From: Podarcis liolepis
Taxonomy: Eukaryota
NCBI GenBank assembly: GCA_965112155.1
Contig: OZ218098.1
Strand: one strand, 5' to 3'
DNA length: 64,000 nucleotides
Shown piece after piece: positions 19,389 through 63,192 of this stretch; position 1 is the first letter of the stretch; the number at the start of each line of letters is the position of its first letter. Both the position numbers and the translations under genes were made by a program. The notes below the pieces were generated by a model. It made no database searches and was not told where the DNA came from. It saw nothing but the letters and a program-made list of their open reading frames with translations.

Positions 19389-19854
19389 CATGAGTAGGCA
19401 AACTAAGGCCCAGGGGCTGGATCCGGCCCAATCGCCTTCTAAATCTGGCCTGCAGACGGTCCGGGAATCAGCGTGTTTTTACATGAGTAGAATGTGTGCT
19501 TTTATTTAAAATGCATCTCTCTGTTATTTGGAATTCATTCTTCCCCCCCCCAAAAAAATATATATATATACCAATCCGTAGGCATGCCACCCGTAGGCAT
19601 TCCCTCCATAACACGCACAGATATTTCCCCTTACTTTTTAGGAGGAAAAAAGTGAGTGTTATGGNNNNNNNNNNNNNNNNNNNNNNNNNNNNNNNNNNNN
19701 NNNNNNNNNNNNNNNNNNNNNNNNNNNNNNNNNNNNNNNNNNNNNNNNNNNNNNNNNNNNNNNNNNNNNNNNNNNNNNNNNNNNNNNNNNNNNNNNNNNN
19801 NAGGTCTGAGGGACAGTGGACCTGCCCCCTGCCGAAAAAGTTTGCTTATCCCTG
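19389..19854 (+). mobile_element. hAT MITE (CATGGGTAGGCAAAC family) spanning an assembly gap
   Basis: 8-bp TSD GGGTAATC at 19381-19388 and 19855-19862; body shared with copies at 27453, 37314 and 51200. Confidence 0.85.
19665..19801. other. Assembly gap (137 N)
   Basis: Run of N. Confidence 1.
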
Positions 19855-34839: not shown

Positions 34840-36212
34840 CCGTATATATTGAATTCAGTAAGCCTTTAGACAAAGCCCCCCATTATATTATTGGGGAGAA
34901 GCTGGTAATATATGTGCTGGACAAGGTCACTGTTAGGTGGATTTGTAGCTAACTGAACCCCAAGAGTGCTCACTAATGGTTCCTCATCATCTTGGAAAAA
35001 AGGGACAAGTGGGTGCTGCAGGGTTCTGTCCTAGGCCCATTGTTGTTCAGCATCTTTATAAATAACTTGGATGAATGAACTGAGGGGATGCTCATGAAAT
35101 TTGCAGACAACGCCAAGCTGGGAGGGGTAGCCAATGCCTCGGAAGACAGAATCAGGATTCAAAATGACCTTAATAGATTGGGAAACTGGGCCAAAACTAA
35201 CTAAATGAATTACAATAGGGAGAAATATCAGGTTCTATACTTAGGCAGGAAGAACCAGCTGCACAAATATAAGATGCTGGGCACCTGGATTGCCAGTAGT
35301 ACACGTAAAAAGAATCTAGGGGTCTTAGTAGATCACAATTTGAACACGAGTCAACAGTGTGATGCAGCAACAAAAAGGCTAATGCTGTTCTATGCTGTGT
35401 CAACAGAAGTACAGTGGGACCTCCAGTTGAGAACGGGATCCGTTCCGGAGCTCCGGTCACATCCCGAGGAATTTGCAACTGGAGGTGATGCTTCTGTGCA
35501 TGCGCATGACGCGGTTTAGCACTTCTTTGCATGTGCGCAGCACCTAGAGCACTTCTGTGCATGCGTGCGGGGCAAAACCCGGCAAAATACTTCTGCGTTT
35601 GCCGCATACGTATACTGAGGGATACATAACCGGAGGTGAACGCAAGTAGAGGTACCACTGTATAGTGTTCCAATCAAGGGAAGTTATAGTACCACTCTAT
35701 TCTGCCTTTGGCAGACCACACCTGCAGTACTGTTCTGGGCACCACAATTTAAGAAGGATATTGAGGAACATGTGTAGAGGAGGGTAACCAAGATGATAAA
35801 GGGTGTGGAAACCAAGCCTTATGAGGAATGGTTGCAGGAATTGGGTATGTTTAGCCTGGAAAAGAGGAGACTAAGAGGAGATATAATGGCCATCTTCAAC
35901 TATCTAAAGGGCTGTCACATAATATATGGAACAAGCTTGTTTTCTCCTGCTCTGGAGTGTAGAACCCGAACCAATGGCTTCAAGTTAAAAGAAAGGAGAT
36001 TCCAACTAAACCTCAGGAAGAACTTTCCAACAGTAAGAGCTGTTTGACAGTGGAATGGACATCCTCAGGTGGTGGCAGACTCTCCATTTAATAGTTTCAA
36101 GCAATGGTTGGATGGTCATTTGTCATGGATGCTTTAGTTGAGATTCCTGCATTGTAGGGAGTTGGACTCGGTGAATGTCAGGATCCCTTCCAACCCTACA
36201 ATGCTATGATTC
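34840..36212 (+). mobile_element. CR1 LINE 3' portion (decayed RT and C-terminus)
   Basis: Remnants of DFSKAFDK, QGSVLGP, KFADxxKL, YEEWLQELGMFSLEKRRLRGD; 3' end CCCTTCCAAC...CTATGATTC. Confidence 0.92.
35412..35660. mobile_element. Tc1/mariner MITE (second family) nested in CR1
   Basis: TA-CAGTGGGACCTC...GAGGTACCACTG-TA; removing it rejoins CR1 (caacagaagTA|tagtg); three internal CTTCT(G/T)TGCATG repeats. Confidence 0.85.
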
Positions 36213-41940: not shown

Positions 41941-44569
41941 CTTGGTAATCTTGTCGAAACCCTCCAGGAAATCTACAGCTCTGGCCGGCCTCAGGATTTT
42001 CGACAGGGCAAGGTATCCTCTCTTGAAGCCTCAACCAGATCTCCTATTGGAGAGAGCACTTATAAGTAATCTGAGAACTCTTTCCGCCCACGCTGTCCCG
42101 CATACAGATGCACTCCCTCTCTTAATTCCACTCATGCCAAGATAATACCACTCCTAGGCCATATAGCTTGACAAATAAAAGAACCACAACTGTACAAGGC
42201 CAGGACTTTTGTTATTCCCTTACCCCTCCCTTGCTTGATCTGATGCTAATTGATCTGATTAGCATGTGTTAATAGCAAAGCCAACCCAATCATCAGTCAT
42301 GTCTGGAACCCTGCTTGTGGCCTTTGCATTTTTTGCATTAAGCTATGTTGACTTCTTAAGGTTAAAAGAGGTTTTAAGGCCACTATTGTGGCTGAGAGGT
42401 CTGTCCGTCCCCCCCTCATTCCTTTGAAGGATTGCTCAAATCCCCATTTAGATTAAGGAAATTAACTATTTAATTGGATATTTAACCCCCACCCCTGTTC
42501 CAATGGGACCCAGGCAGACTTAATGTTTCTTTATTCTATCCAATAAATTAGCTTATACAGCCTTTGCAAGATCATGCTCATAATGAGGCTGTATCTCTGA
42601 AACAAAAGCTTGTTGGGATAGGAGGACGTGTGCCAAGAGTAATATCAGATGCTGGGCCCGCCTTCCCTCAATGAATCCCCACTGGCATTCTTAATAGACC
42701 CTGCATGCTTGCTTGCATTTTCCTGAACAAAACTAGCAGTGAATCTGCTGACAGTTAAATTCCCTCTGCCTGCATTTTCTAGTAAGGCTGTTACAGATAA
42801 GAGCAGCCTGGGTCTGAGCAGATTTCTCAGTGCCCCAATTCCTCCCAGTTGAAAATGGGCATAATAGGCAAGTAAATGAATGGCAGGTTTCTCCATCTGC
42901 AAAGATTCTAAAACCTCAAGGGGAACGTTTTTGCTGAAATGAATGGGAGCTGTGCAAGAGCTTAGCAGTGCCCAGTGGACTGAGCCCTAAGACAGAGCTA
43001 ATGCTCCAACATGGCAAGAGGGTATTACTTAAATTAGGAAGGGGTAGGGCACAACCCTGCATTACATGACCTCCTTCCTATGACACCCTACAGCATAGTG
43101 ACAACTGGCAACCGCATCACTCTGCAATACAGATTACAACTGGGCAAGAAGAATCTATTGGGAGACAAAAAAGCAAGCAAAAAACAACAACCACCCCCCC
43201 TCCCTGCCTGACACGCTGAGTGCTGGCTATTCTTAGCTTTTCTTCTGAGTATTCAGAAAAACACATTAGGGAAGGAGGAAATTATAGCTCAATAGCATGC
43301 GTAAGGGTGCCAGGCTCAGTTTCTGACATCTTCAGTTAAAAGATCATGAGCAGAATAGATCTGATGGCAGCAGACCTGTATGCTTAAATGTGGCTCTACC
43401 CCCAACCACATGGAAGAAGGAAGGGGTTGTTTTTTAGGGACAAATACATGGCAACCCGGTGTTCACAGCTTACCTGTCCACAGTTTCTGTGATGGTTCTC
43501 TCCTTCTCAGCTAAACTCCAATAGCAAGAGTGTGCTCAGCTGAGAAAAGTGCTTGAAGAGTAAGGACTACAGGGACATAAGCTACAAGCAAGGGGAGGAT
43601 TCTGTACCCATTTTGCTGTTAGAAACAGACCATTCACTCCCTCTTTCTGCAGTTCTGTCTTGAGGGGGTTGAGTGGAGAGATCTATCTCTAAATGCACAG
43701 AGCTGCCAGAGCTAGTTTGAACCTTAGCCTTAGAGGGCCTCTACCACTCAGAATACACAGTTCTGTCCTCTAGATGGACCAGTTGACTCAACTCGGCATA
43801 ACACTGCTTCATCCATTTGCAGCAATACAACAAGTTGTGTAGAGGATGACTTCTTTTGTCTAGTCTTTCCAGATGCCCAGGTCTTGACTCCTGGATTATC
43901 CGCCAACACCCTCAGACCAAGAAAAAATAGAGAATTACATATGCTTACATACACACTTCCCAACCCCGTAATTTATGCTTCATGGTGAAATTGATGCAAT
44001 TGTGGTGCGGGGGGGGGTGAGGGAGGCAGCTAGGAGCAGGGGCGCCGACTTATAAAAAATATTGGGGGGGCCCATACCGGGGTCCTGCCGCTGGTTCGCT
44101 CGGGTAGCCGGGAGAACGCAGTTCGAGGTGGCGGTGTTGGGGAGAGACCCTCGCTCAGGGCGCCACTAGACTTGGCGGCCGGCGGCCTATCTGGGGGGTT
44201 TTGGAGTGTATTTCGGCGGAGCGATTGGGGAGGAGGGGGCTTGTTGTCGGATTCTTCAGCTGAGCCGGAGATCCGCTGCTGGGGGTCCCTGGGCCGAGTT
44301 GTGAGCACGGCCTGCTGAAGGGAGATCCAGCCGATTGCGCGACGGGGACGGCCGGGGCTCTCCGGCTAGGGCGCGCGGCTGGCTGGCTGGCGAGGGAGCA
44401 GGTGGGGAGGAGGCGGGGGTCCTCACTCTCTTAGGAAACACTCCCGCGCGCCCGATTGCCACGAAGTCCGAAGGGTGCGTGTGTGGAATTAAAAAGCAAA
44501 AACGAGATACGGGCAGGGCAGGCAAAGAGTTTTCTGCAAGAGGATGGAGGGCAGGTTGAAGAGAAAATC

Positions 44570-45582
44570 ACTCAGGATGAGACAGTCAAATCAGCCATGA
44601 TAAAATGGGCTCAGGATATTGGGTATAACATCATGTTTGAGGACTGGGAAAGGTTATGGACCACCGGAATGAAATTCACGGCATGTAATGCCTTGAAGGA
44701 AAATATTATGAAAATGATTTATAGGTGGTACATGACCCCAGTCAAGCTTGCAAAAATATATCACCTGTCTGATAATAAATGTTGGAAATGTAAGGAGGCT
44801 GAAGGGACATTCTTTCACCTCTGGTGGACTTGTCCAAAAGTGAAGGCCTTCTGGGAAATGATCTATAATGAGTTAAAAAAGGTATTTAAGTATACCTTTC
44901 CCAAGAAACCAGAGGCCTTCCTCTTGGGCATTGTTGGCCAGAAAGTGTTAAAGAAGGATAGAACTTTCTTTATGTATGCAACTACAGCAGCAAGAATACT
45001 TATCGCAAAATATTGGAAGACACAAGATTTGCCCACACTGGAAGAGTGGCAGACGCAATTGATGGACTACATGGAACTGGCTGAAATGACTGGCAGAATC
45101 CGAGATTTGGGAGAAGAAACAACGGAAGAGGACTGGAAAAAATTTAAGGACTATTTACAAAAACAATATAAGTTGTATGAATGTTAAAAATTTACACGAT
45201 TCGGAAACTATAGCTTCAGCAATTAGATTTGGGAAACAGGAAATTATATTTTAAGTAAGAAAAGGTCAAAATCTAAGGTAATACTATGTTTAATTTAAGA
45301 TATAAGTAACTGATGAAAAGTATGTTAAATTTAGAGGTATAGTATTTGAAAAGTACAAAATAAGGTACGAAACAAGGTAATAATTTGCTGATATCTTTAT
45401 TATAAAGAATGCAGGGTAAGGGAGATGCGAGGAAGTCCAGTTAGTTATATAAAAAATGTGTTGAATGGTTGGTTTTCTTTTCTTCTTTTTCTTTTTTTCT
45501 TTTTCTTGTTCTTTTACTTTTTTCTTCAGTGTATGTTTCTAACTTTGTATTTGAAAACTTAATAAAATATTTATAAAAAAAA
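44570..45582 (+). mobile_element. 5'-truncated L1-clade LINE nested in element A
   Basis: Open ORF2 C-terminus with zinc knuckle CWKC-x7-H-x4-C, stop at 45187; AT-rich 3'UTR; AATAAA at 45561; A8 tail; 12-bp TSD GAAGAGAAAATC at 44558-44569 and 45583-45594. Confidence 0.92.
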
Positions 45583-46036
45583 GAAGAGAAAATCCTTTCG
45601 CTTTTCTGGGGCGCAGGGAAGTCTCAGAGCCGGAGGTTGGGGAAGGGACCGCCTTTGCTCTGCCCTCTTCTCCCGTCTTAGATTCGCATGGGGGTCCCCG
45701 CCCGAGCTTGCCTGGCCACCGGGCCACACAAGGGCCGCGCTCTACGCGGCGCACCTTGCTAGCCGCGCAGCTGTCCTCCGCGGCTGCGGAGCGGCCCTGC
45801 GCCGGTGCCCAGCCCCTCTGGGCGCCCGCTGCGCTGCCAATGACAAGCGGGCGACGTCGCAGGCGGGGAAGGCGTCGCTTTCTTTCCCGATCCTTCATCC
45901 TCCCAGTCTTCCAGCCCTTTTTTGGGTTGGAAGCTCGTCTCGTTCGCCCTTCTCCTTTCTTCACCCTGCGCGCAATTTTCCTCCCTCGTCTCCCTCCCCA
46001 TTTCTCCTTCCTTCCTTCCTGACTGACTGACTGACG

Positions 46037-46108
46037 GGCTTGGGCTCGGGCTCGGGCTTTGGCTCGGGCTTTGGCTTTGGCTCGGGCTCAGGCTTAGGCT
46101 CGGGCTCA
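46037..46108 (+). repeat. 12 x GGCTYN hexamer repeat, in frame (Gly-Ser/Phe/Leu)n with the TAL1 fragment
   Basis: Units read directly: GGCTCG, GGCTTT, GGCTCA, GGCTTA, GGCTTG. Confidence 0.9.
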
Positions 46109-46312
46109 GGCAGCCACAGCGTCGGCGGTATTGGCGATCGGCGGCGCGGGGGGATGGCCCTCCCGGGGGAGCCGGCGCTGCTCAATGGGGTTGCCAAGGA
46201 GACAGGCCGGCCGCCCCCCTCCCCCGGCCCGGCGCCCCCCGCCGCGCCGGTGCCCGTTATCGAGCTGGTGCGCGCCGGGCGCCCTATAAAAGCCGCGGAC
46301 GCGCCCACCGCC
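46037..46312 (+). pseudogene. TAL1: Captured TAL1/SCL N-terminal coding fragment (no bHLH domain)
   Basis: RRRGGMALPGEPALLNGVAKETGRPPPSPGPAPPAAPVPVIELVR matches recalled human LLNGVAKET...PVIEL and chicken RGGMEPPAEPQLLLNGAAKEAGRPSPGPPAAAVPVIELVR; cut off by the transposon right end. Confidence 0.85.
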
Positions 46313-48247
46313 GCCCGAGATTATTGGGGGGGCTGAGCCCCCCCAAACGAATTTTTGAGGGGGCTCGGGCCCCCTCAGGCCCCATGGAGTCGGCGCCTAT
46401 GGCTAGGAGTAACCAGAGCTCATGTGCACCTGTGCTAATCTTGTTTCGTTCATTCTGATTTAATATCCCAGTTGAGGGGTGATGTCATGTCACAAAGAGC
46501 CACAGAGGAAGTGGTGTTGCAAAGTGCATTTAACTCCTCACATCCCGAATGGACAAGACTTGGTGATTTTTTTTAAAAAAAAAAATTCTAGTATTTATCT
46601 GGCAGCAGAAATAGTGTTGTTCACAAATATTATTAGTGTTTAGGGATTGGGTTTTTTTTCTTGTTTAGTCAGTTGCCAGATTCTGCAGGGAAAGCAAAAA
46701 ATATACCCTGTGAAGCATTAGATCAGAAGGCTGTCTCAAGGAAGATGCTTGCGTGGACTGTATGGTCAGGGTTTACCTTCTGATAAGAGTAGCCAGGAAC
46801 AGTATTTTACGTAAAAGGTGGCTTTTCAATTGTGCCTGCCACAGGGGTGGAAAACACAAGTCCTTTGTAAAACAATTTTTTGTCAAACTGTATTATAAAT
46901 TGGTGCTTAAGCAAATATTTCCTCCTACTGAACCTTTGTAGCTTTTTCCAATTTAGTTGTGTCAATCCAATATAAGATGTGCAATTTGGAAAGTAAACTT
47001 CACAGAATCTCGCTACTAAACATCAGTATTTCAGAAGAAGCCATTATCGCCGATATGTCCTTGCTGCTCAGTTTTGGGAAGCTGATCAGAACAAGAACAA
47101 GCCTGAAGCTCTAAGTTAGAACAAGATCTGTTTGATTCAGGTGCTGCTTGCTATGCCATGTTCTGCAACGTCTGGAAAAAAATAAATCACTGTGATCTGT
47201 TCAGAAATGAGATCCTACCATCTATCTCAGCCGCCCACCCAGTATATGGGCTCGCTTTCCTAATTAGTATTGTACACGGGGCCGCTTTATCGGCCATCCA
47301 CTGGGGCATGAAATAGAAAAGAGCTCTGTGTGCATGCGTGGGAGCCACAAAGAGAGAGGCAGACTACTGAAATGCAGCATGACTTTGACGTAGGTCTGTT
47401 TCAAGTACAAAGGCCTGCAGCTATGTATGCTGTGATTCAGCTGGAGATTACGGATGATGGACCGGGGGTGGGGGGTGGACAGGGATCTACCAGTAACAGA
47501 CCGGCGCAGTCAAAGGATCCTAGGAGTGATTTCCTAAGCCACTGATTTTCAGAGTGTTCCAGAGGGAACACTAGGGTGAGGATCCTCAATGAGAAGATCA
47601 CTCAGGGCTTTCCTGAAAGGCTGCTTTTACCCAATGTCACAATTCTTCCCTCTGAATAGGCGGCTTCAGCAAAGTCTTGGGTGTGTTTGAGGTCTGTAGT
47701 CTTCAATCTTAATAGATCCAGGTCCTATCTTTAAATGAAATGTACCTTGGGGGCATGTCCTGCTTCTTAATTATTATTTTTTAACATATACTTGTATGGT
47801 GGCAGTGCCGTTGGTGCAACCCAACTTAGTATCCTAGGTCACATTCTGATTTCACTCGGGGAGACCCAACACCTCCAGCCACTGCCCTGAAGGAACTGAG
47901 GGTGTGCTCTAGAAAATGCCCTAAATTTGTCTATAGCACACTGGGTTATCCCGGCAGCCATAGCAAGGCTTCCTTGGCAGAGAGGTCAACACAGAAAATG
48001 TACCAAAAGGTAGGCAATTTGAAGAAACACTGCTCTGGGCAATGCTTTTCCCTCAGTCACTTCTAAACCTATAACAACACCACTGGCAACTGCCTGTTCT
48101 CAGATGACAAGCGTTGCTCACATGTGGCTGCTAAAGATCCCAGGGGGGCTATTTATAAAAGAGGAGTAAAATTAGCCCATAGCATCCTGGCCAAATTCCA
48201 GTGCAGGTAATTTATTTCCTGTCTTCCTAGAATTACATGCATACACA

Positions 48248-48281
<34 letters not shown>

Positions 48282-49796
48282 TACTCCACCCCCACCCCCT
48301 GCAGATTCAATTTATTTTATTTAGCATGGTGTGTTTATCTGCTGCTCTCCCGTCACTAAGATACTTGGTTGCTTTGTAATCATTTAAAAATCTGCAGGCT
48401 GGAAGCAGCCTATGCTGCTTGCTCATGCAGCTGGGAGGTGACAGCCTACTAAAACATTAAAGGGTAATGTGAAAAATAGTTTATCCTGTTGGTGAGTTAT
48501 TGGGGATTGACAGTAGACAGCACATGTGAATCGGCTGGTGCCCCCCCCCCCAAAAAAAAACCAGTACTGAAAGAGATGCACAGTGATCGGAAGAGAAATG
48601 GTGAATGGTGAATCCACCCTCTGTTTACTATTATAGTAAAGGCTGAAAGAATGAAGCGATTAATGGATATGATAAATGAGCTGATTCATTAAACTCAGAT
48701 TTAAAATGTGGGGTTTTTATTGGAACGTGCAGCACACTCGATTTGGTGCTCAGTGCTGATGACAGCACTGTTGAAAGCATTGCATGTCTCAGGATTTTGG
48801 CAGTGCGTTTATTTCCCGAAGGGAAAACGATGCGATGTTGTTGGTTAGTCCACAGAATTGTTCGCCTTCATTTCAATATCCACAAAACAGCACACTTCTT
48901 TGAGTATGTTAATATTTATTTCAGCCAGTTGATTAGCTAACCTAGTAATAGGTGGAGAGCCCTAGCCCTTTGCAGAGAGACCACACACAATGCTTCATGC
49001 ACCAAGGGATGGGGGCAGACGTCAGGACTGCAACAAAGGAGTGAGCCAAGTGTGACAAGGGAGGCGGGTTTAAAAGCCTTTAAAAGCAGGGGTGGGAATG
49101 CTGATGATGGACTCCGGTACCATCAGCCCCAGCCAGTGTGACCAGTGGTCAGGAATGATGGGAGTTATAGTGCAACACCACCGGGAAGGGTCACAGGTTC
49201 TCTAACCTTTCATTAGATACCAGTGAAACGCCTGTCTTTGTAATAGGTAAGTGAGCAGGGAAGTTTATAGATTCTAGGGACTAATCATAAAAAGATGAAT
49301 TTTACACACCCAGACAATCTGTGTCGTCAGAGGTCCAGTGTTATCCCCAAGAGTGTTGCTTTATTTTTATTTTTGCTAATGAATAGAATTGTTGCCTTTC
49401 CCGTCCTCTAGAGCAGTGTTTCCCAACCTTTTTTGGGTAAAGGCACACTTGTTTCATGAAAAAAATCTCGAGGCACACCACCATTACAGCCCCGTGACAT
49501 TAGCAGCAGCGTCACGCCGGGAGGGACGCACGAAAATGTAAGATTCAATTTTTTCCCCTCCCCCTTGCCTTCCTTCTGTGCCAACCGCCAAAAACCCAAG
49601 AATCGCGGGACCGCTGGAGGAGGGGGGGAGGGCGAGCGGAGGCAGCGGCGAGCCCTGTTCCTCCCCATCCGCCCCATTCCGTGCAAGGAGCGCGAACAGG
49701 TGTGAGAAGGGGGTCAAACCTGCGGGTCGGCGCCGGGGAACCTCCAAGCTTTGGGGGTGGGGGGGGAGGAGGCAGCAAAGCGAGGCAGGAAGGAGT

Positions 49797-49916
49797 GCGC
49801 GGCTTGGCGAAGTACTCAGCGGTGAAGGCCAGCAGGTCCGGCGGCCGGTGCCGCAGCACCTCCACCGTGTAGCCCTGCAGCAGCTCAGTCAGACCCGGCG
49901 GGATCTCGATGCTCAT
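49797..49916 (-). pseudogene. PRKAR2A: Captured PKA type II regulatory subunit exon-1 fragment (dimerisation/docking domain), PRKAR2A-like
   Basis: aagATG at 49916; [40 protein letters not shown]; PPG, GY, PPD and EYF residues favour RII-alpha over RII-beta; similarity stops after ~40 codons. Confidence 0.88.
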
Positions 49917-50420
49917 CTTGTAGCCGAGGCGTGCGGGAGACTCAACGGACGGGCCCGGGAGAGAGAGAGAGAGAGACACGACGGAGAGAGAGCGGGAGTC
50001 CCTGCTCGCCGTCGCCACCGCTACAACTACTGTGGCGGTTGGTCTTGGTCGCTGCCGCCGCCGCCGCCCACCTCTATCTATCTCTCCCCCTCAGCTTTCT
50101 ACGCGGGCCTCGAGCCGGAGGTGGGGGGTGGCCGCTGCCGCTTTCTCCACCTCCACGTCCTGCCTCCTCCTCCTCGAGCCCTCCGTCAGCCCTGAGGGAA
50201 CCGCCACGCTCGCGCCGCCGCTCTCTGACACGCGAGAAAGAGAAAGGAACGGAGCGGCGGGGTAGTCGGGGGAAGGAGGGGCCGGAATGGAAGCGCGAGG
50301 CGAGCTGCGCATGCCCAGCAGGAAGCGGCGGAGAACGCCACAGAGAGAGAGAGAGAAGCAAGGGAGGGCGGGGAGTGGGCGGGAACACGCTTCATGCGTC
50401 ACAATAACGGACAAGAGGCG
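49917..50420 (-). promoter_or_regulatory. Captured CpG-island 5'UTR/promoter-like sequence upstream of the RII ATG
   Basis: Dense CpG; NRF1-like TGCGCATGCCCA 50306-50317; GGAAG ETS-like cores; tandem GC boxes at ~50364-50384; directly upstream of the ATG on the minus strand. Confidence 0.55.
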
Positions 50421-50908
50421 CTCGAGGGATAGATTAGGACCTAATTTGACTTTTACAAAAAAAATAAAAATCTTTCGAATTTTCCCCACGGCACACCAGG
50501 CAACATCTCGCGGCACACTAGTGTGCCGCAGAACAGTGGTTGGGAAACACTGCTCTAGAGGACAGAAGGGGACATGGCACCAGAAGCCCATCGTGTGTAA
50601 CCAAGGCAAACGGCGAAGGAGCTTGCTTTTATATGCATCTAGTATCTAATGCTCTTGTGGGAGCTTAGGGTCTTAATATGTAACATTATGCATTTATATT
50701 ATGCAAGAATAGAATATAAGATTTCTCTTCAGTGTGGAAGAATGGGGTTTAATTGTCCTCTTTACCACAGGGTCATTATTTGACTTTGGGACTTTGCATC
50801 CAGTTCTCTGATTCAGTTTCCTATCTGCAGAATTTTCATAAAAATCAGTTTGTGGGGAAATAGGGATAGTTGATCAGTAACCTTATTCCCTCCACTCTCT
50901 TTCTCCAG

Positions 50909-53975: not shown

Positions 53976-54809
53976 GTAGGTTGCCTTCTGAAAGAGAGGC
54001 ACTAATGTTTTTCTTTGCATTTGACTTTGGGGTGTGGCTTTTTTGTTTTTTAAGTGGTGCTGTTTATCATGAAGCATACTTACAGTGTGTCTCGCTCAAG
54101 AGTACTGGCTAATAAGCATGAAAGAACATAGTGCCATATACATTATAGGGTTGATTCCAATCATAGTCCTACCAGGAGTAAATCCATGGAAATCAATGGA
54201 CGTGACTATCTCAGGTCCATTAACTTCAGTAGGTCTAGTCTGATAATACCTTAATTAGATACCTCCCATAATCTACCTGTGCTGTGTTTTCAGTTACTCG
54301 TTTGCCAGTTTCTTCAGTGTAAGCTAACAGGCTGGTTTGCATGACTGTCAGGCTTGTAGTTGCCACTTGAATCTCATCTGCAGGTTGGCTCCCAGCCTGT
54401 TGCCAGCTGGTCCCCATGCATGTGCCAGCAGGCTCACAGCAGACATAAGTGTTTAGCTGTTAGTGGCAACATGCAAAAAAAGAAGAAAAAGAAAGAAAAG
54501 AAGCACCTTGGTGTGACATGTGGCAGTGGCAGTATGGGGACAAGGAGCCAACATCCACAGACAGATCCTATGGCTACTGCCGTGAGTCTGAAGGTTGTCC
54601 AAAATGACCATTACATAAACAAGGAGTGATCTTTAAAGCGTCACATTACACTCCTACTCCTTGATGTCCCAGGGCGTGTGGGGGAAACAGATCCAGCCGA
54701 TTTCCAGTGCTGCATTGAATCATACAATTTTTGCAGCGCCCCGCACCCAAATCCTTAGAAGTAAGAAAGGGCCCAGTAACAACTGCAGCTGTCTTGTTTG
54801 CCCCAACAG

Positions 54810-55923
54810 GTTTGTAAAAGACCGGCGTCCCTCCATCTCGCCCAACTTCAACTTCCTGGGCCAGCTCCTAGAGTATGAGAGAAGCCTGAAGCGGCTCAAG
54901 GCTCTGAAGGCCCAAGGGGAGAAGGGCAAAGGGGAATCCCAGCAAGACCAGCCAGAAGCCCCTGAAGGCTGCAGGCACCAGATTCTGTCTACCTCAGAAA
55001 AGGCTGAGGAGCTTTTCAGAAGCACAACCTCGGAGACCTCCTCGCTTGACTCCGAGAAGCCAGCGGGAGTCTCCAAGGTTGTCTCGCCTACAGCACTGCA
55101 GCAAGGGCTCCGTGGCCTCCACTTGTCTTCAGAGCGCATCCAAGACACCAACCGGCTGAAGCGTTCCTTCTCCCTGGACATCAAGTCAGCCTACACCCCT
55201 AGCCGGAGGCAGCAGGATCCCCCAGGTCCAACAGAGGCAGGAGAAACCCCCAAGCTGTGCAAGCTGGACAGCCCATCAGGTCCCAACGGCACATGCCAGT
55301 TCTCCCCTGTCCCAGACAGCCCGGACTGGCCCAGCGGGCCCGACTTCCTCCTCGAGGCCAAAGTACGGCAGAGACGGAAGCACAGGCACCAAGCCGGCTC
55401 CCCTGCCCACGGGCTGAGCCTTAACTTCAGTGGGGTGTGCGCCATGCACAAGAGCGCCAGCGTGGAGGACAGCCTCAAGCAGACCCTTCGGGCGGGCCTC
55501 CCCGGTGTGGGGCAGCAGCCGACCGCCACCCCGGCCCCCACTGGCACTTGGGGGGTGCACTTGGAGTCCCCCGGCACCCCTTCCTCCGAAAACCCCTGGT
55601 ACTTCAGCACAGACTCGGCGGCGGGCGGCAAAGGCAGCGGGAGCGGGGCTCTGTTTGCCGGCACGGCCACCTACTCCTCGTTCAGCTGCAGCACAATCCA
55701 GGCGAGCTGCGAGATCAGGCTGAGGGACAAGCAGCGGGGCGAGGCGCGGGACGTGCGGCACAGCTGGCACGAGGACACCGCGGCCGAGAAGCAGTTCAAG
55801 CGCAGGAGCTGCCAGATGGAGTTCGAGGAGACCCTCTCGGAGAGCAGGTCTCGGGAAGACCTGGGCAAAATCAGCAAACAGTCTAGCTTTTCGGGCAGCA
55901 TGGAAATCATTGAGGTGTCCTGA
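54810..55923 (+). CDS. DUSP8: DUSP8 terminal coding exon (end of catalytic domain plus long Ser/Pro-rich C-terminal tail)
   Basis: ccccaacag acceptor; FVKDRRPSISPNFNFLGQLLEYERSLK...LQQGLRGLHLSS...NRLKRSFSLDIKSAY...PKLCKLDSPSG...QFKRRSCQMEFEE...SFSGSMEIIEVS-TGA; the GLRGLHLSS and PKLCKLDSP motifs match DUSP8 better than DUSP16. Confidence 0.96.
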
Positions 55924-60262: not shown

Positions 60263-60372
60263 CAGTGTTTCTCAAACTTTGGTCCCCAGCTGTTGTTGGA
60301 CTTCAACTCCCATCATCCCTGACCGCTGGTCCTGCTAGCTAGGGATGATGGGGACCCAAATTTGAGAAACAC
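60263..60372. mobile_element. Palindromic hAT (Charlie-like) MITE
   Basis: CAGTGTTTCTCAAA...TTTGAGAAACACT ends; same core as 36375. Confidence 0.8.
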
Positions 60373-61598
60373 TTAATCCTGTGCCTCTTTTCCTGTGGGA
60401 CCAACAGGAGAATAGCATTCAGACATGCAGGTGATCAGAGCAGATATTGCTGCAGGGCAGAACAGTTCATAATGGAGCCCTGCTTTCATAAATGGTAAGC
60501 AGTAGACATGAAGGATGAAATCTATAAGGCTGTTAAGCAATCCAGTCTTCAGCAGTCACTCCGCAGCATCTCTGCTTTTCACAACTAAATTGCTGTCCTA
60601 GGTTGGTTGTTGTTGTTTTTGCAAAAAGTCCACAAGGAATTAAAAACAGTCACTTGGAAAGTTCACAGATCATTGGCACTGCAGTGTTCAGCATGTCCCT
60701 TGGGAATATTTACAGGGATGACCTGGAAAATCCTATCTCTTTTCAATGTCGGCTGCCATCTTTGCTGTGACACAATGTGCTACTTGCATTCTGTGAATAC
60801 CAAGGGCCCTTGAGATCTGTTCTGTGTTACAAGTGTAGCAGTGTTTGGTGCAGAAAATACCACAAGGACAAATTCGTGACAGCTACCGAACACTTGAAAT
60901 TTATACAAAAGTGCTGCAGTCCATTCTGCCAGACGGAAACTTTCTCAATTCACAATCTGATTTCAGCCAGTGCTGCAAAGTCAATCCTTACAGTATATTT
61001 TAGCAACTAATAGCATCAGTGGGGAAGGACAAAAAGGAATGGTTGCTTGCTCTGAAGAGCTGCCACCTGCTGTCATTTCAGAGCAATCACTCCTCCAGAA
61101 TGAAAAGATGGGGAAGAATATGTGGGTATTCAGGCTAGCATTCCCAGCAAGCTACAAAATTGCCAACAATTCCCTTCAGCAGGAAAAAAAATGGGCCAAT
61201 CTGAGTGGGGGGAGGAATTTTTAGGACAATTGGTGGAGATTGAGGTGAAAATCTGGGGATTTTCTCAAATGAAGAGAATATCAGGAAAAGAAGGGCAATT
61301 TAAAATGGTGAAAGACACAGTCTTAATCTTCACCCTTCTTATGAAAATCAAATTTGCATTTTCTATTTCCTTTCTAACCTTGTTAGAAGCCATATTTGGG
61401 CTATTTTCTATAGCCCTATGTGGAATGTAACCTGCAGGAAATAATCTACCATTGCCTTCTATTGAAAACATCAGAAGAATGCCATTATGCTTGTCTTAGT
61501 TGAACTCAAAAGGCATCTTTGTCTTGTCTTTATTGGGATCAGGTTAAGCCCACAGGTGACCTAGAACAGCTTTTCCTAAAAATATTAGCTGTTTAACT

Positions 61599-63056: not shown

Positions 63057-63192
63057 CAGTGATGGGCAAACGTGGCCCTCCAGCTGTTTTGGGACTACAA
63101 TTCCCATCATCCCTAGCTAACAGGACCAGTGGTCAGGGATGACGGGAATTGTAGTCCCAAAACAGCTGGCAGGCCAAGTTTGACCATCACTG
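63057..63192. mobile_element. Palindromic hAT MITE
   Basis: TIR CAGTGATGG; perfect TSD TCCTAGAG at 63049-63056 and 63193-63200. Confidence 0.9.

What the first reader, a model, noticed from the sequence alone, without database searches (positions are those of the whole stretch)
44037..50552. Pack-MULE-like gene capture by hAT transposons in a lizard: two independent elements carry CpG-island 5' ends of other genes
Seen: two elements 3,012 bp apart with different TIRs (CAGGGGCGCCGACT and CAGTGTTTCCCAACC), each with a perfect 8-bp TSD and no transposase. Their interiors are CpG-dense host-like DNA in an otherwise CpG-poor intron, and encode recognisable N-termini of TAL1 and PKA RII. Established: 8-bp TSDs mark hAT elements; plant Pack-MULEs capture GC-rich 5' gene fragments; such pack elements are much less documented in vertebrates. 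Inference: two captures by two families in one 7-kb stretch suggest capture of promoter/first-exon CpG islands is frequent genome-wide in this lineage, scattering portable CpG islands and N-terminal exon pieces. I cannot confirm novelty without a literature and database check.
Basis: partly seen in the sequence, partly recalled or inferred. Interest (0 to 1): 0.92.

Follow-up and report, generated by a model that had tools for sequence, protein, structure and literature searches.

The report
Lizard hAT transposons carrying host-gene fragments
Two small transposase-less hAT transposons sitting 3 kb apart in an intron of a lizard DUSP8-like gene each carry about 1 kb of CpG-island DNA copied from other genes (a piece of TAL1; the start of a PKA RII gene), a vertebrate example of the "Pack" type of gene-fragment capture that is already documented in animals but may be unusually common in this genome.

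Summary
E1 (44037-46401) has 12/14 TIRs and a perfect 8-bp TSD. E2 (49414-50552) has 15/15 TIRs and a perfect 8-bp TSD. Neither encodes a transposase. Their interiors have CpG o/e 0.86-0.93, against 0.17-0.30 in the flanks.

E2 carries, on the minus strand, the start codon and about 40 codons of a PKA RII docking/dimerisation domain (Pfam RIIa, E 6.8e-13), with about 500 bp of upstream CpG-island DNA.

E1 carries 75 codons that are 95% identical, without gaps, to Podarcis TAL1 residues 35-109. This is an internal exon piece, not the gene's 5' end. E1 also holds about 930 bp of unidentified CpG-island-like DNA and a nested L1 fragment.

Both are therefore Pack-type hAT elements (transduplication). 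The kind is known: Tan et al. 2021 list 208 Pack-hATs among 370 animal Pack-TIRs.

I could not test whether these copies transposed with their cargo, or how common capture is in this genome.

The scan's first readers noted similar elements on other pieces of this genome. These include two more RII-cargo copies (1133 and 1139 nt) and one more TAL1-cargo copy (2349 nt). They are unchecked leads.

The parts
44029..44036 (.). E1 left target-site duplication, GCTAGGAG
   Evidence: It is identical to 46402-46409.
44037..46401 (+). E1: non-autonomous hAT-like element. It is 2,365 bp long, or about 1,340 bp without the nested L1.
   Evidence: The TIRs are CAGGGGCGCCGACT and, reverse-complemented, CATAGGCGCCGACT (12/14), with an 8/8 TSD. 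No transposase ORF was found.
44070..44557 (.). E1 cargo segment A, left part: CpG-island-like DNA of unidentified source. The boundary with the TE end is approximate.
   Evidence: GC is 0.65 and CpG o/e 0.93. It has no Pfam hit and no TAL1 match.
44570..45582 (+). Nested 5'-truncated L1: the ORF2 C-terminal part, the 3'UTR and a short A-tail. It is flanked by the 12-bp TSD GAAGAGAAAATC at 44558-44569 and 45583-45594.
   Evidence: The TSD was located. The ORF 44456-45187 contains a CWKC...HLWWTCP zinc-knuckle region, with a weak zf-RVT hit (E 0.11). GC is 0.35.
45595..46025 (.). E1 cargo segment A, right part: CpG-island-like DNA that continues the left part across the L1 insertion site. It contains CCAAT-like and CRE-like motifs.
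   Evidence: GC is 0.69 and CpG o/e 0.86 over 45596-46403. It shows no TAL1 aa 1-34 homology. The motifs were read directly.
46025..46110 (+). Hexanucleotide microsatellite (GGGCTC/GGCTTT)n at the 5' edge of the TAL1 fragment.
   Evidence: the repeat finder family D1. TAL1 identity begins inside it.
46094..46318 (+). TAL1 exon fragment: 75 codons, corresponding to Podarcis TAL1 aa 35-109.
   Evidence: tblastn gives 71/75 identity with no gaps and E 1e-46 to P0008-P0010 (70/75 to P0011; P. muralis / P. raffonei TAL1, all with the HLH domain PF00010). Identity is 71-76% to the other squamate TAL1s aligned over the comparable stretch (Rhineura, a snake, a gecko, Pogona). The whole-library phmmer search gave E 2.6e-19 and 2.2e-5, the latter to an NCBI-named TAL1.
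46319..46401 (.). E1 right subterminal region and TIR.
   Evidence: TAL1 homology stops at 46318. G7/C7 palindromic motifs are shared with the left end.
46402..46409 (.). E1 right target-site duplication, GCTAGGAG
49406..49413 (.). E2 left target-site duplication, CTCTAGAG (palindromic; fits the hAT nTnTAnAn pattern).
   Evidence: (I3)
49414..50552 (-). E2: non-autonomous hAT element of 1,139 bp. The cargo gene fragment reads on the minus strand.
   Evidence: The TIR is 15/15 and the TSD 8/8. Subterminal GGCACAC/GTGTGCC motifs lie at 49442, 49472, 50490, 50512 and 50521. The same terminal 23-mer ends MITEs with 8-bp TSDs in other DNA.
49795..49918 (-). PKA RII (RII-alpha-like) start codon (ATG at 49916-49918, minus strand) and docking/dimerisation domain, about 40 codons. 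It is the start of an open 123-codon frame running down to 49545.
   Evidence: Pfam RIIa scored E 6.8e-13 over ORF residues 42-72. PDB RII-alpha D/D chains scored E 3e-14 and RII-beta 1.8e-10, and similarity ends near RII residue 44.
49919..50420 (-). About 500 bp upstream of the RII start codon: CpG-island DNA, presumed to be the 5'UTR and promoter of the parental gene. This is an inference.
   Evidence: CpG o/e is 0.87 over 49480-50420. No protein homologue was found for its 158-aa ORF.
50553..50560 (.). E2 right target-site duplication, CTCTAGAG

Best explanation
Both elements are Pack-type hAT transposons (transduplicates). Each is a non-autonomous hAT element that keeps only its TIRs and about 50-130 bp of subterminal transposase-binding sequence. 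Its interior has been replaced by host DNA copied at the DNA level from CpG-island regions of other genes.

**Shown**
- The TIR, TSD and no-transposase anatomy of both elements.
- The host-gene identity of the cargo: E2 holds the PKA RII start plus upstream DNA; E1 holds TAL1 aa 35-109 plus unidentified CpG-rich DNA.
- The two elements belong to two unrelated TIR families.
- The TAL1 capture is recent on a lacertid timescale: 95% aa identity to Podarcis TAL1, against 71-76% to the other squamate TAL1s aligned over the comparable stretch.

**Inferred**
- The cargo was acquired elsewhere, by template switching during double-strand-gap repair of a hAT copy. The repair used an ectopic, open-chromatin CpG-island template.
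- In E1's lineage an L1 then inserted into the cargo.
- The cargo-bearing elements were mobilised in trans by autonomous hAT transposases and inserted into the last intron of the DUSP8-like gene, creating the 8-bp TSDs.
- They are probably members of small multicopy families.

The gene pieces are too short to give TAL1 or RII function. The likeliest biological effect is scattering of CpG islands and possible promoters and short N-terminal ORFs.
For: **hAT anatomy**
- TIRs and TSDs.
- E2's terminal 23-mer ends bona fide MITEs (176-511 bp) with 8-bp TA-centred TSDs and the same kind of GGCAC(A/C)C subterminal motif in 50 independent contigs. It is therefore a real hAT-type end.
- No transposase domain was found in any ORF of either element.

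**Cargo**
- RII.
- TAL1.
- The TAL1 fragment stops exactly where E1's terminal region starts (46318/46319) and lacks aa 1-34 and everything after aa 109. It cannot be the functional gene, which in Podarcis encodes 376-394 aa with a bHLH.
- CpG o/e is about 0.9 inside against about 0.2 outside.

**Precedent**
- Pack-hATs are known in animals, with microhomology at breakpoints and a frog example that captured a 5'UTR and transposed (PMC8277862).
- hAT TcBuster favours TSS and CpG-island regions (PMC3499496).
- Anolis hAT/hobo elements incorporate extraneous DNA (PMC3014272).

**Leads for multicopy status (unchecked first-reader notes)**
- RII-cargo elements of 1133 and 1139 nt, and a TAL1-cargo element of 2349 nt, on other pieces of this genome.
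Against: - Protein-collection searches with cargo ORFs were blank, and the by-sequence look-up was blank (said to mean nothing).
- In Tan et al. only 4 of 370 animal Pack-TIRs were multicopy, and most arose in situ without transposition.
- No autonomous partner with either TIR was found.
- The source of about 930 bp of E1's cargo is unknown. It could be family-specific TE sequence rather than host DNA.
- Promoter activity and transcription were not tested.
Confidence: 0.65

Rival explanations
1. In-situ gap filling. Two ordinary hAT MITEs inserted here first. Later each suffered an internal break that was repaired from an ectopic template (the TAL1 and PKA RII loci). Under this model the cargo never moved and each Pack element is single-copy.
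For: This is the majority route for animal Pack-TIRs in Tan et al. 2021, where 366 of 370 are single-copy. Intact TSDs and TIRs fit it equally well. I saw no second copy myself.
Against: - It needs two independent ectopic repairs in two unrelated elements 3 kb apart.
- In Tan et al. such cases sit in old, degenerate TEs (median 18% divergence) and show a bias toward nearby templates. E2 has perfect TIRs and TSD.
- First-reader notes (unchecked) report same-cargo elements of nearly identical length elsewhere in the genome.
- The near-equal length of the other TAL1-cargo element (2349 against 2365 nt) suggests it also holds the L1. In-situ filling would not predict that.
Confidence: 0.15
2. Macrotransposition, a composite element. 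Two hAT copies, or one copy plus a stray end, landed in or beside a CpG-island promoter, a favoured hAT target. The transposase then used the outer ends and mobilised the intervening host DNA. The outcome is the same Pack element but the capture step differs, with no template switching.
For: hAT elements favour TSS and CpG-island regions, which would explain a 5'-end and CpG-island bias directly. The cargo sizes (about 0.9-1.3 kb) are larger than the 224-bp median for gap-filled animal Pack-TIRs.
Against: E1's cargo looks composite: unidentified CpG-rich DNA, then a microsatellite, then an internal TAL1 exon piece without the adjoining aa 1-34. That fits template switching better than a single contiguous genomic segment. 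No parental locus was available for comparison.
Confidence: 0.15
3. Assembly chimera or collapsed repeat. Under this reading the GC-rich interiors were mis-joined between hAT ends by the assembler.
For: GC-rich, repeat-flanked segments are error-prone. I obtained no read-level support.
Against: - Each element is bounded by an exact 8-bp TSD and matching TIRs. A mis-join would not create that.
- The L1 inside E1 has its own 12-bp TSD.
- Twenty runs from 10 studies and 5 organism labels hold 20-70% of the stretch's 31-mers, although it is not known which parts they hold.
Confidence: 0.02

Closest known systems
Animal Pack-TIRs, in particular Pack-hATs (Tan et al. 2021, Nat Commun 12:4280; e.g. 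Pack-hAT-N8_XT of Xenopus tropicalis)
   Same: A non-autonomous hAT with intact TIRs and 8-bp TSD, whose interior is replaced by a host gene fragment. The frog case also captured a 5'UTR and transposed. Exonic cargo is over-represented.
   Different: The cargo here is about 4-5 times larger than the 224-bp median and is whole CpG-island sized. Two unrelated families sit 3 kb apart. Lizards are not mentioned in the main text of that paper. Multicopy status here is only a lead, and multicopy cases were very rare there (4 of 370).
Rice and maize Pack-MULEs
   Same: Capture of GC-rich 5' gene fragments by a TIR transposon, often with several fragments per element, yielding chimeric ORFs and portable promoters.
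   Different: These belong to a different superfamily. MULEs have long TIRs (about 100-200 bp or more) and 9-10 bp TSDs, whereas here the TIRs are 14-15 bp and the TSDs 8 bp. No Pack-MULE was found in animal reference genomes. This is an analogy of outcome, not membership.
Anolis carolinensis hobo_AC and other non-autonomous hAT families (Novick et al. 2011, PMC3014272)
   Same: Squamate hAT elements that incorporate extraneous 'filler' DNA, including fragments of other TEs, as with the L1 in E1.
   Different: The filler reported there is mostly other transposons. Host exons and CpG islands do not appear in that text.
Helitron gene capture in vespertilionid bats and Xenopus (PMC4224331, PMC12001565)
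   Same: Vertebrate DNA transposons that capture promoters, 5'UTRs and first exons and amplify them.
   Different: Helitrons use a rolling-circle mechanism and have no TIRs or TSDs. The elements here are cut-and-paste hAT.

Membership tests
hAT superfamily (non-autonomous element) | 8-bp target-site duplication | tested here: met
   E1 has GCTAGGAG on both sides and E2 has CTCTAGAG on both sides, both 8/8.
hAT superfamily (non-autonomous element) | Short TIRs (about 10-25 bp) beginning YARNG | tested here: met
   E2 begins CAGTG on both ends, with a 15/15 TIR. E1 begins CAGGG on the left and CATAG on the right, with a 12/14 TIR.
hAT superfamily (non-autonomous element) | Target consensus nTnnnnAn (often nTCTAGAn) | tested here: inconclusive
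   E2's CTCTAGAG fits fully. E1's GCTAGGAG fits at position 7 but not at position 2. Two sites are too few to judge.
hAT superfamily (non-autonomous element) | The same ends occur on other elements with hAT-type TSDs | tested here: met
   This was tested for E2 only. Its 23-nt terminus is exact in 50 metagenome contigs. Complete 176-511 bp elements there have 8-bp TSDs such as CCTTAGGG and GGTTACAG, and similar GGCACCC subterminal motifs. It was not tested for E1.
hAT superfamily (non-autonomous element) | An autonomous partner encoding a hAT transposase (BED finger, hAT dimerisation domain) with matching TIRs | tested here: inconclusive
   There is none in the window's two elements. The only long ORFs in the 50 related contigs are CCDC93 and a reverse transcriptase. 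The lizard genome itself could not be searched.
Pack-TIR / Pack-hAT (transduplication) | Intact TIR and TSD frame without a transposase | tested here: met
Pack-TIR / Pack-hAT (transduplication) | The interior is homologous to a host gene that lives elsewhere | tested here: met
   TAL1: 71/75 aa to Podarcis TAL1, a 376-394 aa bHLH protein. PKA RII: Pfam RIIa E 6.8e-13. Both fragments are truncated at the TE ends, so neither can be the functional gene.
Pack-TIR / Pack-hAT (transduplication) | The parental copy is identified at a separate locus of the same genome, with defined breakpoints | not testable with these tools
Pack-TIR / Pack-hAT (transduplication) | Multicopy with different TSDs, as proof that the cargo transposes | not tested
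   There are only unchecked first-reader notes of same-cargo elements on other pieces of this genome: 1133 and 1139 nt for RII and 2349 nt for TAL1.
Pack-MULE | Mutator-type long TIRs and 9-10 bp TSD | tested here: not met
   The TIRs are 14-15 bp and the TSDs 8 bp. These elements work like a Pack-MULE but are not members.

The most novel reading that the evidence does not exclude
This lacertid genome may have undergone a burst in which several hAT families repeatedly captured CpG-island promoters and first-exon pieces of many genes and then amplified them. That would scatter hundreds of portable CpG islands and short N-terminal ORFs, such as a stand-alone RII docking domain, through introns. 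It would be a vertebrate counterpart of the rice Pack-MULE phenomenon, far above the roughly 4 Pack-TIRs per genome and 1% multicopy rate reported for animals.
Probability: 0.45. Interest if true: 0.8.

Novelty: new member of a known kind. Interest (0 to 1): 0.55.

Why it matters
Pack-type capture is a main route to exon shuffling and promoter dispersal in plants. In animals it has been seen as rare, small and mostly immobile.

Here two young hAT elements of different families each carry about 1 kb of CpG-island DNA with recognisable coding starts or exon pieces, side by side in one intron.

If the same-cargo copies noted elsewhere in this genome are real, lacertid lizards would offer a natural system for three questions:
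- how cut-and-paste transposons acquire promoter regions;
- whether transposed CpG islands stay unmethylated and active;
- whether the resulting mini-ORFs, for example an isolated AKAP-binding RII domain, are ever used.

If they are single-copy, they are two more entries in a known catalogue.

Tried and rejected
**1. Read-level check.**
- I therefore have no depth, junction, empty-site or RNA evidence.
- For the same reason I made no Podarcis PRKAR2A comparison and no fold or complex prediction of the RII mini-ORF.

**3. Protein-collection searches with cargo ORFs.** E1's 98-aa ORF and E2's 158-aa upstream ORF gave nothing. The length window and the sparse lizard ORF content of the collection make these blanks uninformative.

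**4. Metagenome scan for E2's terminus.**
- It returned 50 contigs, but they look invertebrate (CpG o/e about 1; a single-ORF CCDC93).
- They carry only MITEs, not lizard copies.
- No hAT transposase lies next to the ends.

**5. Findings look-ups.** The look-up by TIR words was not accepted and the look-up by sequence was blank.

**6. Other copies in the window.** A search for other copies of either family found none. The hits at 60263 and 55392 are an unrelated MITE and a chance match inside an exon.

**7. Retrocopy origin rejected.** The cargo has no poly(A) and no downstream exons, and it includes about 500 bp upstream of the ATG.

**8. True gene locus rejected.** The TAL1 piece lacks aa 1-34 and everything after aa 109, and it abuts TE ends.

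Full report
**1. Observation**

E1
- The sequence at 43.8-50.8 kb shows E1 starting at 44037 with CAGGGGCGCCGACT.
- E1 ends at 46401. The reverse complement of that end reads CATAGGCGCCGACT, a 12/14 match.
- The 8-mer GCTAGGAG flanks it on both sides, at 44029-36 and 46402-09.

E2
- E2 runs from 49414 to 50552 with a perfect 15-nt TIR, CAGTGTTTCCCAACC.
- It is flanked by the palindromic TSD CTCTAGAG.

Chance and composition
- Either TIR pattern is expected about 0.2 times per window at up to 2 mismatches.
- CpG o/e is 0.86-0.93 inside the elements and 0.17-0.30 outside.
- A window-wide scan finds six CpG-rich patches. Three are these cargos and one is a true exon.
- No ORF in either element has a transposase domain.

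**2. Cargo of E2**

- The minus-strand ORF 49545-50018 contains an ATG at 49916-49918, followed by a PKA type-II regulatory-subunit docking/dimerisation domain.
- Pfam RIIa scores E 6.8e-13, above the gathering score.
- PDB RII-alpha D/D chains score E 3e-14 and RII-beta 1.8e-10. The alignment starts at the protein's own N-terminus and ends near residue 44.
- About 500 bp of CpG-island DNA lies upstream of the ATG inside the element. I take it to be 5'UTR and promoter, but this is an inference.
- GGCACAC/GTGTGCC motifs cluster in the first ~65 and last ~65 bp, as expected for transposase-binding subterminal repeats.

**3. Cargo of E1**

- A whole-library phmmer search with the 60-aa ORF piece gave three hits (E 2.6e-19, 2.2e-5, 7.8e-4). 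One is named by NCBI as TAL1 of Pelodiscus.
- Using the best hit as bait recovered squamate TAL1 proteins, all with the HLH domain.
- tblastn of these against E1 shows that 46094-46318 encodes 75 residues with no gaps.
- Those residues are 71/75 identical to P. muralis and P. raffonei TAL1 residues 35-109.
- Identity is only 71-76% to the other squamate TAL1s aligned over the comparable stretch (Rhineura, a snake, a gecko and Pogona).
- The capture therefore happened in the lacertid lineage, well after the split from amphisbaenians. The window is from a Podarcis-like lizard.
- TAL1 residues 1-34 are absent. Upstream lies a hexanucleotide microsatellite (D1) and about 930 bp of CpG-island-like DNA with no identified source.
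- Homology stops at 46318, exactly where the G/C-palindrome-rich terminal region begins.
- E1 also holds a 5'-truncated L1 (44570-45582) with an A-tail and its own 12-bp TSD. Without it the element is about 1.34 kb.
- So E1 carries an internal exon fragment, probably together with DNA from another locus. It does not carry the 5' end of TAL1.

**4. Setting**

- The elements lie in the intron before the last exon of a DUSP8-like gene.
- That ORF spans 54661-55923. The end of a DSPc domain was detected by Pfam, and the best PDB match is DUSP8 entry 4jmk at E 2.5e-12.
- The TAL1 piece is in the sense orientation relative to the host gene, and the RII piece is antisense.

**5. Are the ends really hAT?**

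- The 8-bp TSDs and CAG-type TIRs meet the defining features.
- E2's terminal 23-mer is exact in 50 JGI metagenome contigs.
- There it ends 176-511-bp MITEs with 8-bp, TA-centred TSDs and GGCACCC subterminal motifs.
- Those contigs look invertebrate: CpG o/e is about 1, and one has a single-ORF CCDC93.
- They say nothing about lizard copy number. They do show that the end is a genuine, widespread hAT terminus.
- No transposase lies next to those ends.

**6. What could not be tested**

- The look-up of sequencing runs found 20 holders from 10 studies and 5 coded organisms.
The cap then blocked a second try.
- Protein searches with cargo ORFs were blank.
- As a result, copy number, parental loci in this assembly, empty sites, assembly support and expression remain open.

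**7. Leads from the scan's own notes (unchecked)**

- First readers reported many 'Pack-hAT' candidates with CpG-island cargo on other pieces of this genome.
- Two more have PRKAR2A-type cargo, at 1133 and 1139 nt. The second is the same length as E2 and is said to lie in RBM20 intron 1.
- One more has TAL1 cargo, at 2349 nt against 2365 nt here.
- If those notes are right, both elements belong to multicopy families that transposed with their cargo.
- The L1 would then have entered E1's lineage before amplification.
- I could not verify any of this. The by-sequence look-up was blank.

**8. Mechanism**

Most likely (0.65):
- The cargo was captured by template switching during gap repair of a hAT copy.
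- The element was then mobilised in trans to this intron.
- This agrees with the composite look of E1 and with the breakpoint microhomology reported for animal Pack-TIRs.

Rivals:
- In-situ gap filling without transposition (0.15). This is the commonest route in Tan et al..
- Macrotransposition of a CpG-island segment between two hAT ends (0.15). It is attractive because hAT elements such as TcBuster favour TSS and CpG-island regions.
- Assembly artefact (0.02).

**9. Comparison and novelty**

- Pack-hATs are documented in animals. Of 370 Pack-TIRs, 208 are hAT; the median cargo is 224 bp; 13.4% are exonic; four are multicopy.
- Anolis hAT elements are known to take up extraneous DNA.
- I found no paper on Pack-hATs in lizards.
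- What is verified here is therefore a new member of a known kind.
- It is notable for its large CpG-island-sized cargo and for two families lying side by side.
- The genome-wide burst reading remains open (probability about 0.45) and would be much more interesting.

Noticed in passing
window 54661-55923 (+): This is the last coding exon of a DUSP8-like dual-specificity phosphatase. It holds the end of the DSPc domain and a long C-terminal tail ending ...SFSGSMEIIEVS. The best PDB match is DUSP8 entry 4jmk (E 2.5e-12). The two Pack elements lie in the intron just upstream of it.
   Followed up: partly
L001-L050 (JGI metagenome contigs); window 49414-49436: E2's terminal 23-mer CAGTGTTTCCCAACCTTTTTTGG is exact in 50 contigs. 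These look like an invertebrate host (CpG o/e about 1; a single-ORF CCDC93 in L038). There it ends 176-511-bp MITEs with 8-bp TSDs and similar GGCAC(A/C)C subterminal repeats. This could reflect a deeply conserved hAT terminus or horizontal transfer between an invertebrate and lizards.
   Followed up: partly
window 63057-63192: A 136-bp hAT-type MITE with 13/14 TIRs (CAGTGATGGGCAAA) and the 8-bp TSD TCCTAGAG. It has no cargo.
   Followed up: no
window 60263-60375 and 49090-49200: MITE-like repeats of about 110 bp. The first has TIR-like ends CAGTGTTTCTCAAAC...GTTTGAGAAACACT. They share a GGGAGTT(A/G)TAGT-type core and are unrelated to E2 despite the similar first bases.
   Followed up: no
window 35421-35620: A 200-bp CpG-rich patch (o/e 0.99) with repeated GCATGCGC-like motifs. 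It is embedded in what looks like a LINE/CR1-type repeat, and no TIR/TSD frame was seen around it.
   Followed up: no
window 44000-50600: Six small assemblies labelled 'RNA? (a guess)' hold 20-38% of the stretch's 31-mers. This hints that parts of this intronic region, possibly the cargos, are transcribed.
   Followed up: no
window 19665-19801: A run of 137 N (an assembly gap or masked stretch).
   Followed up: no
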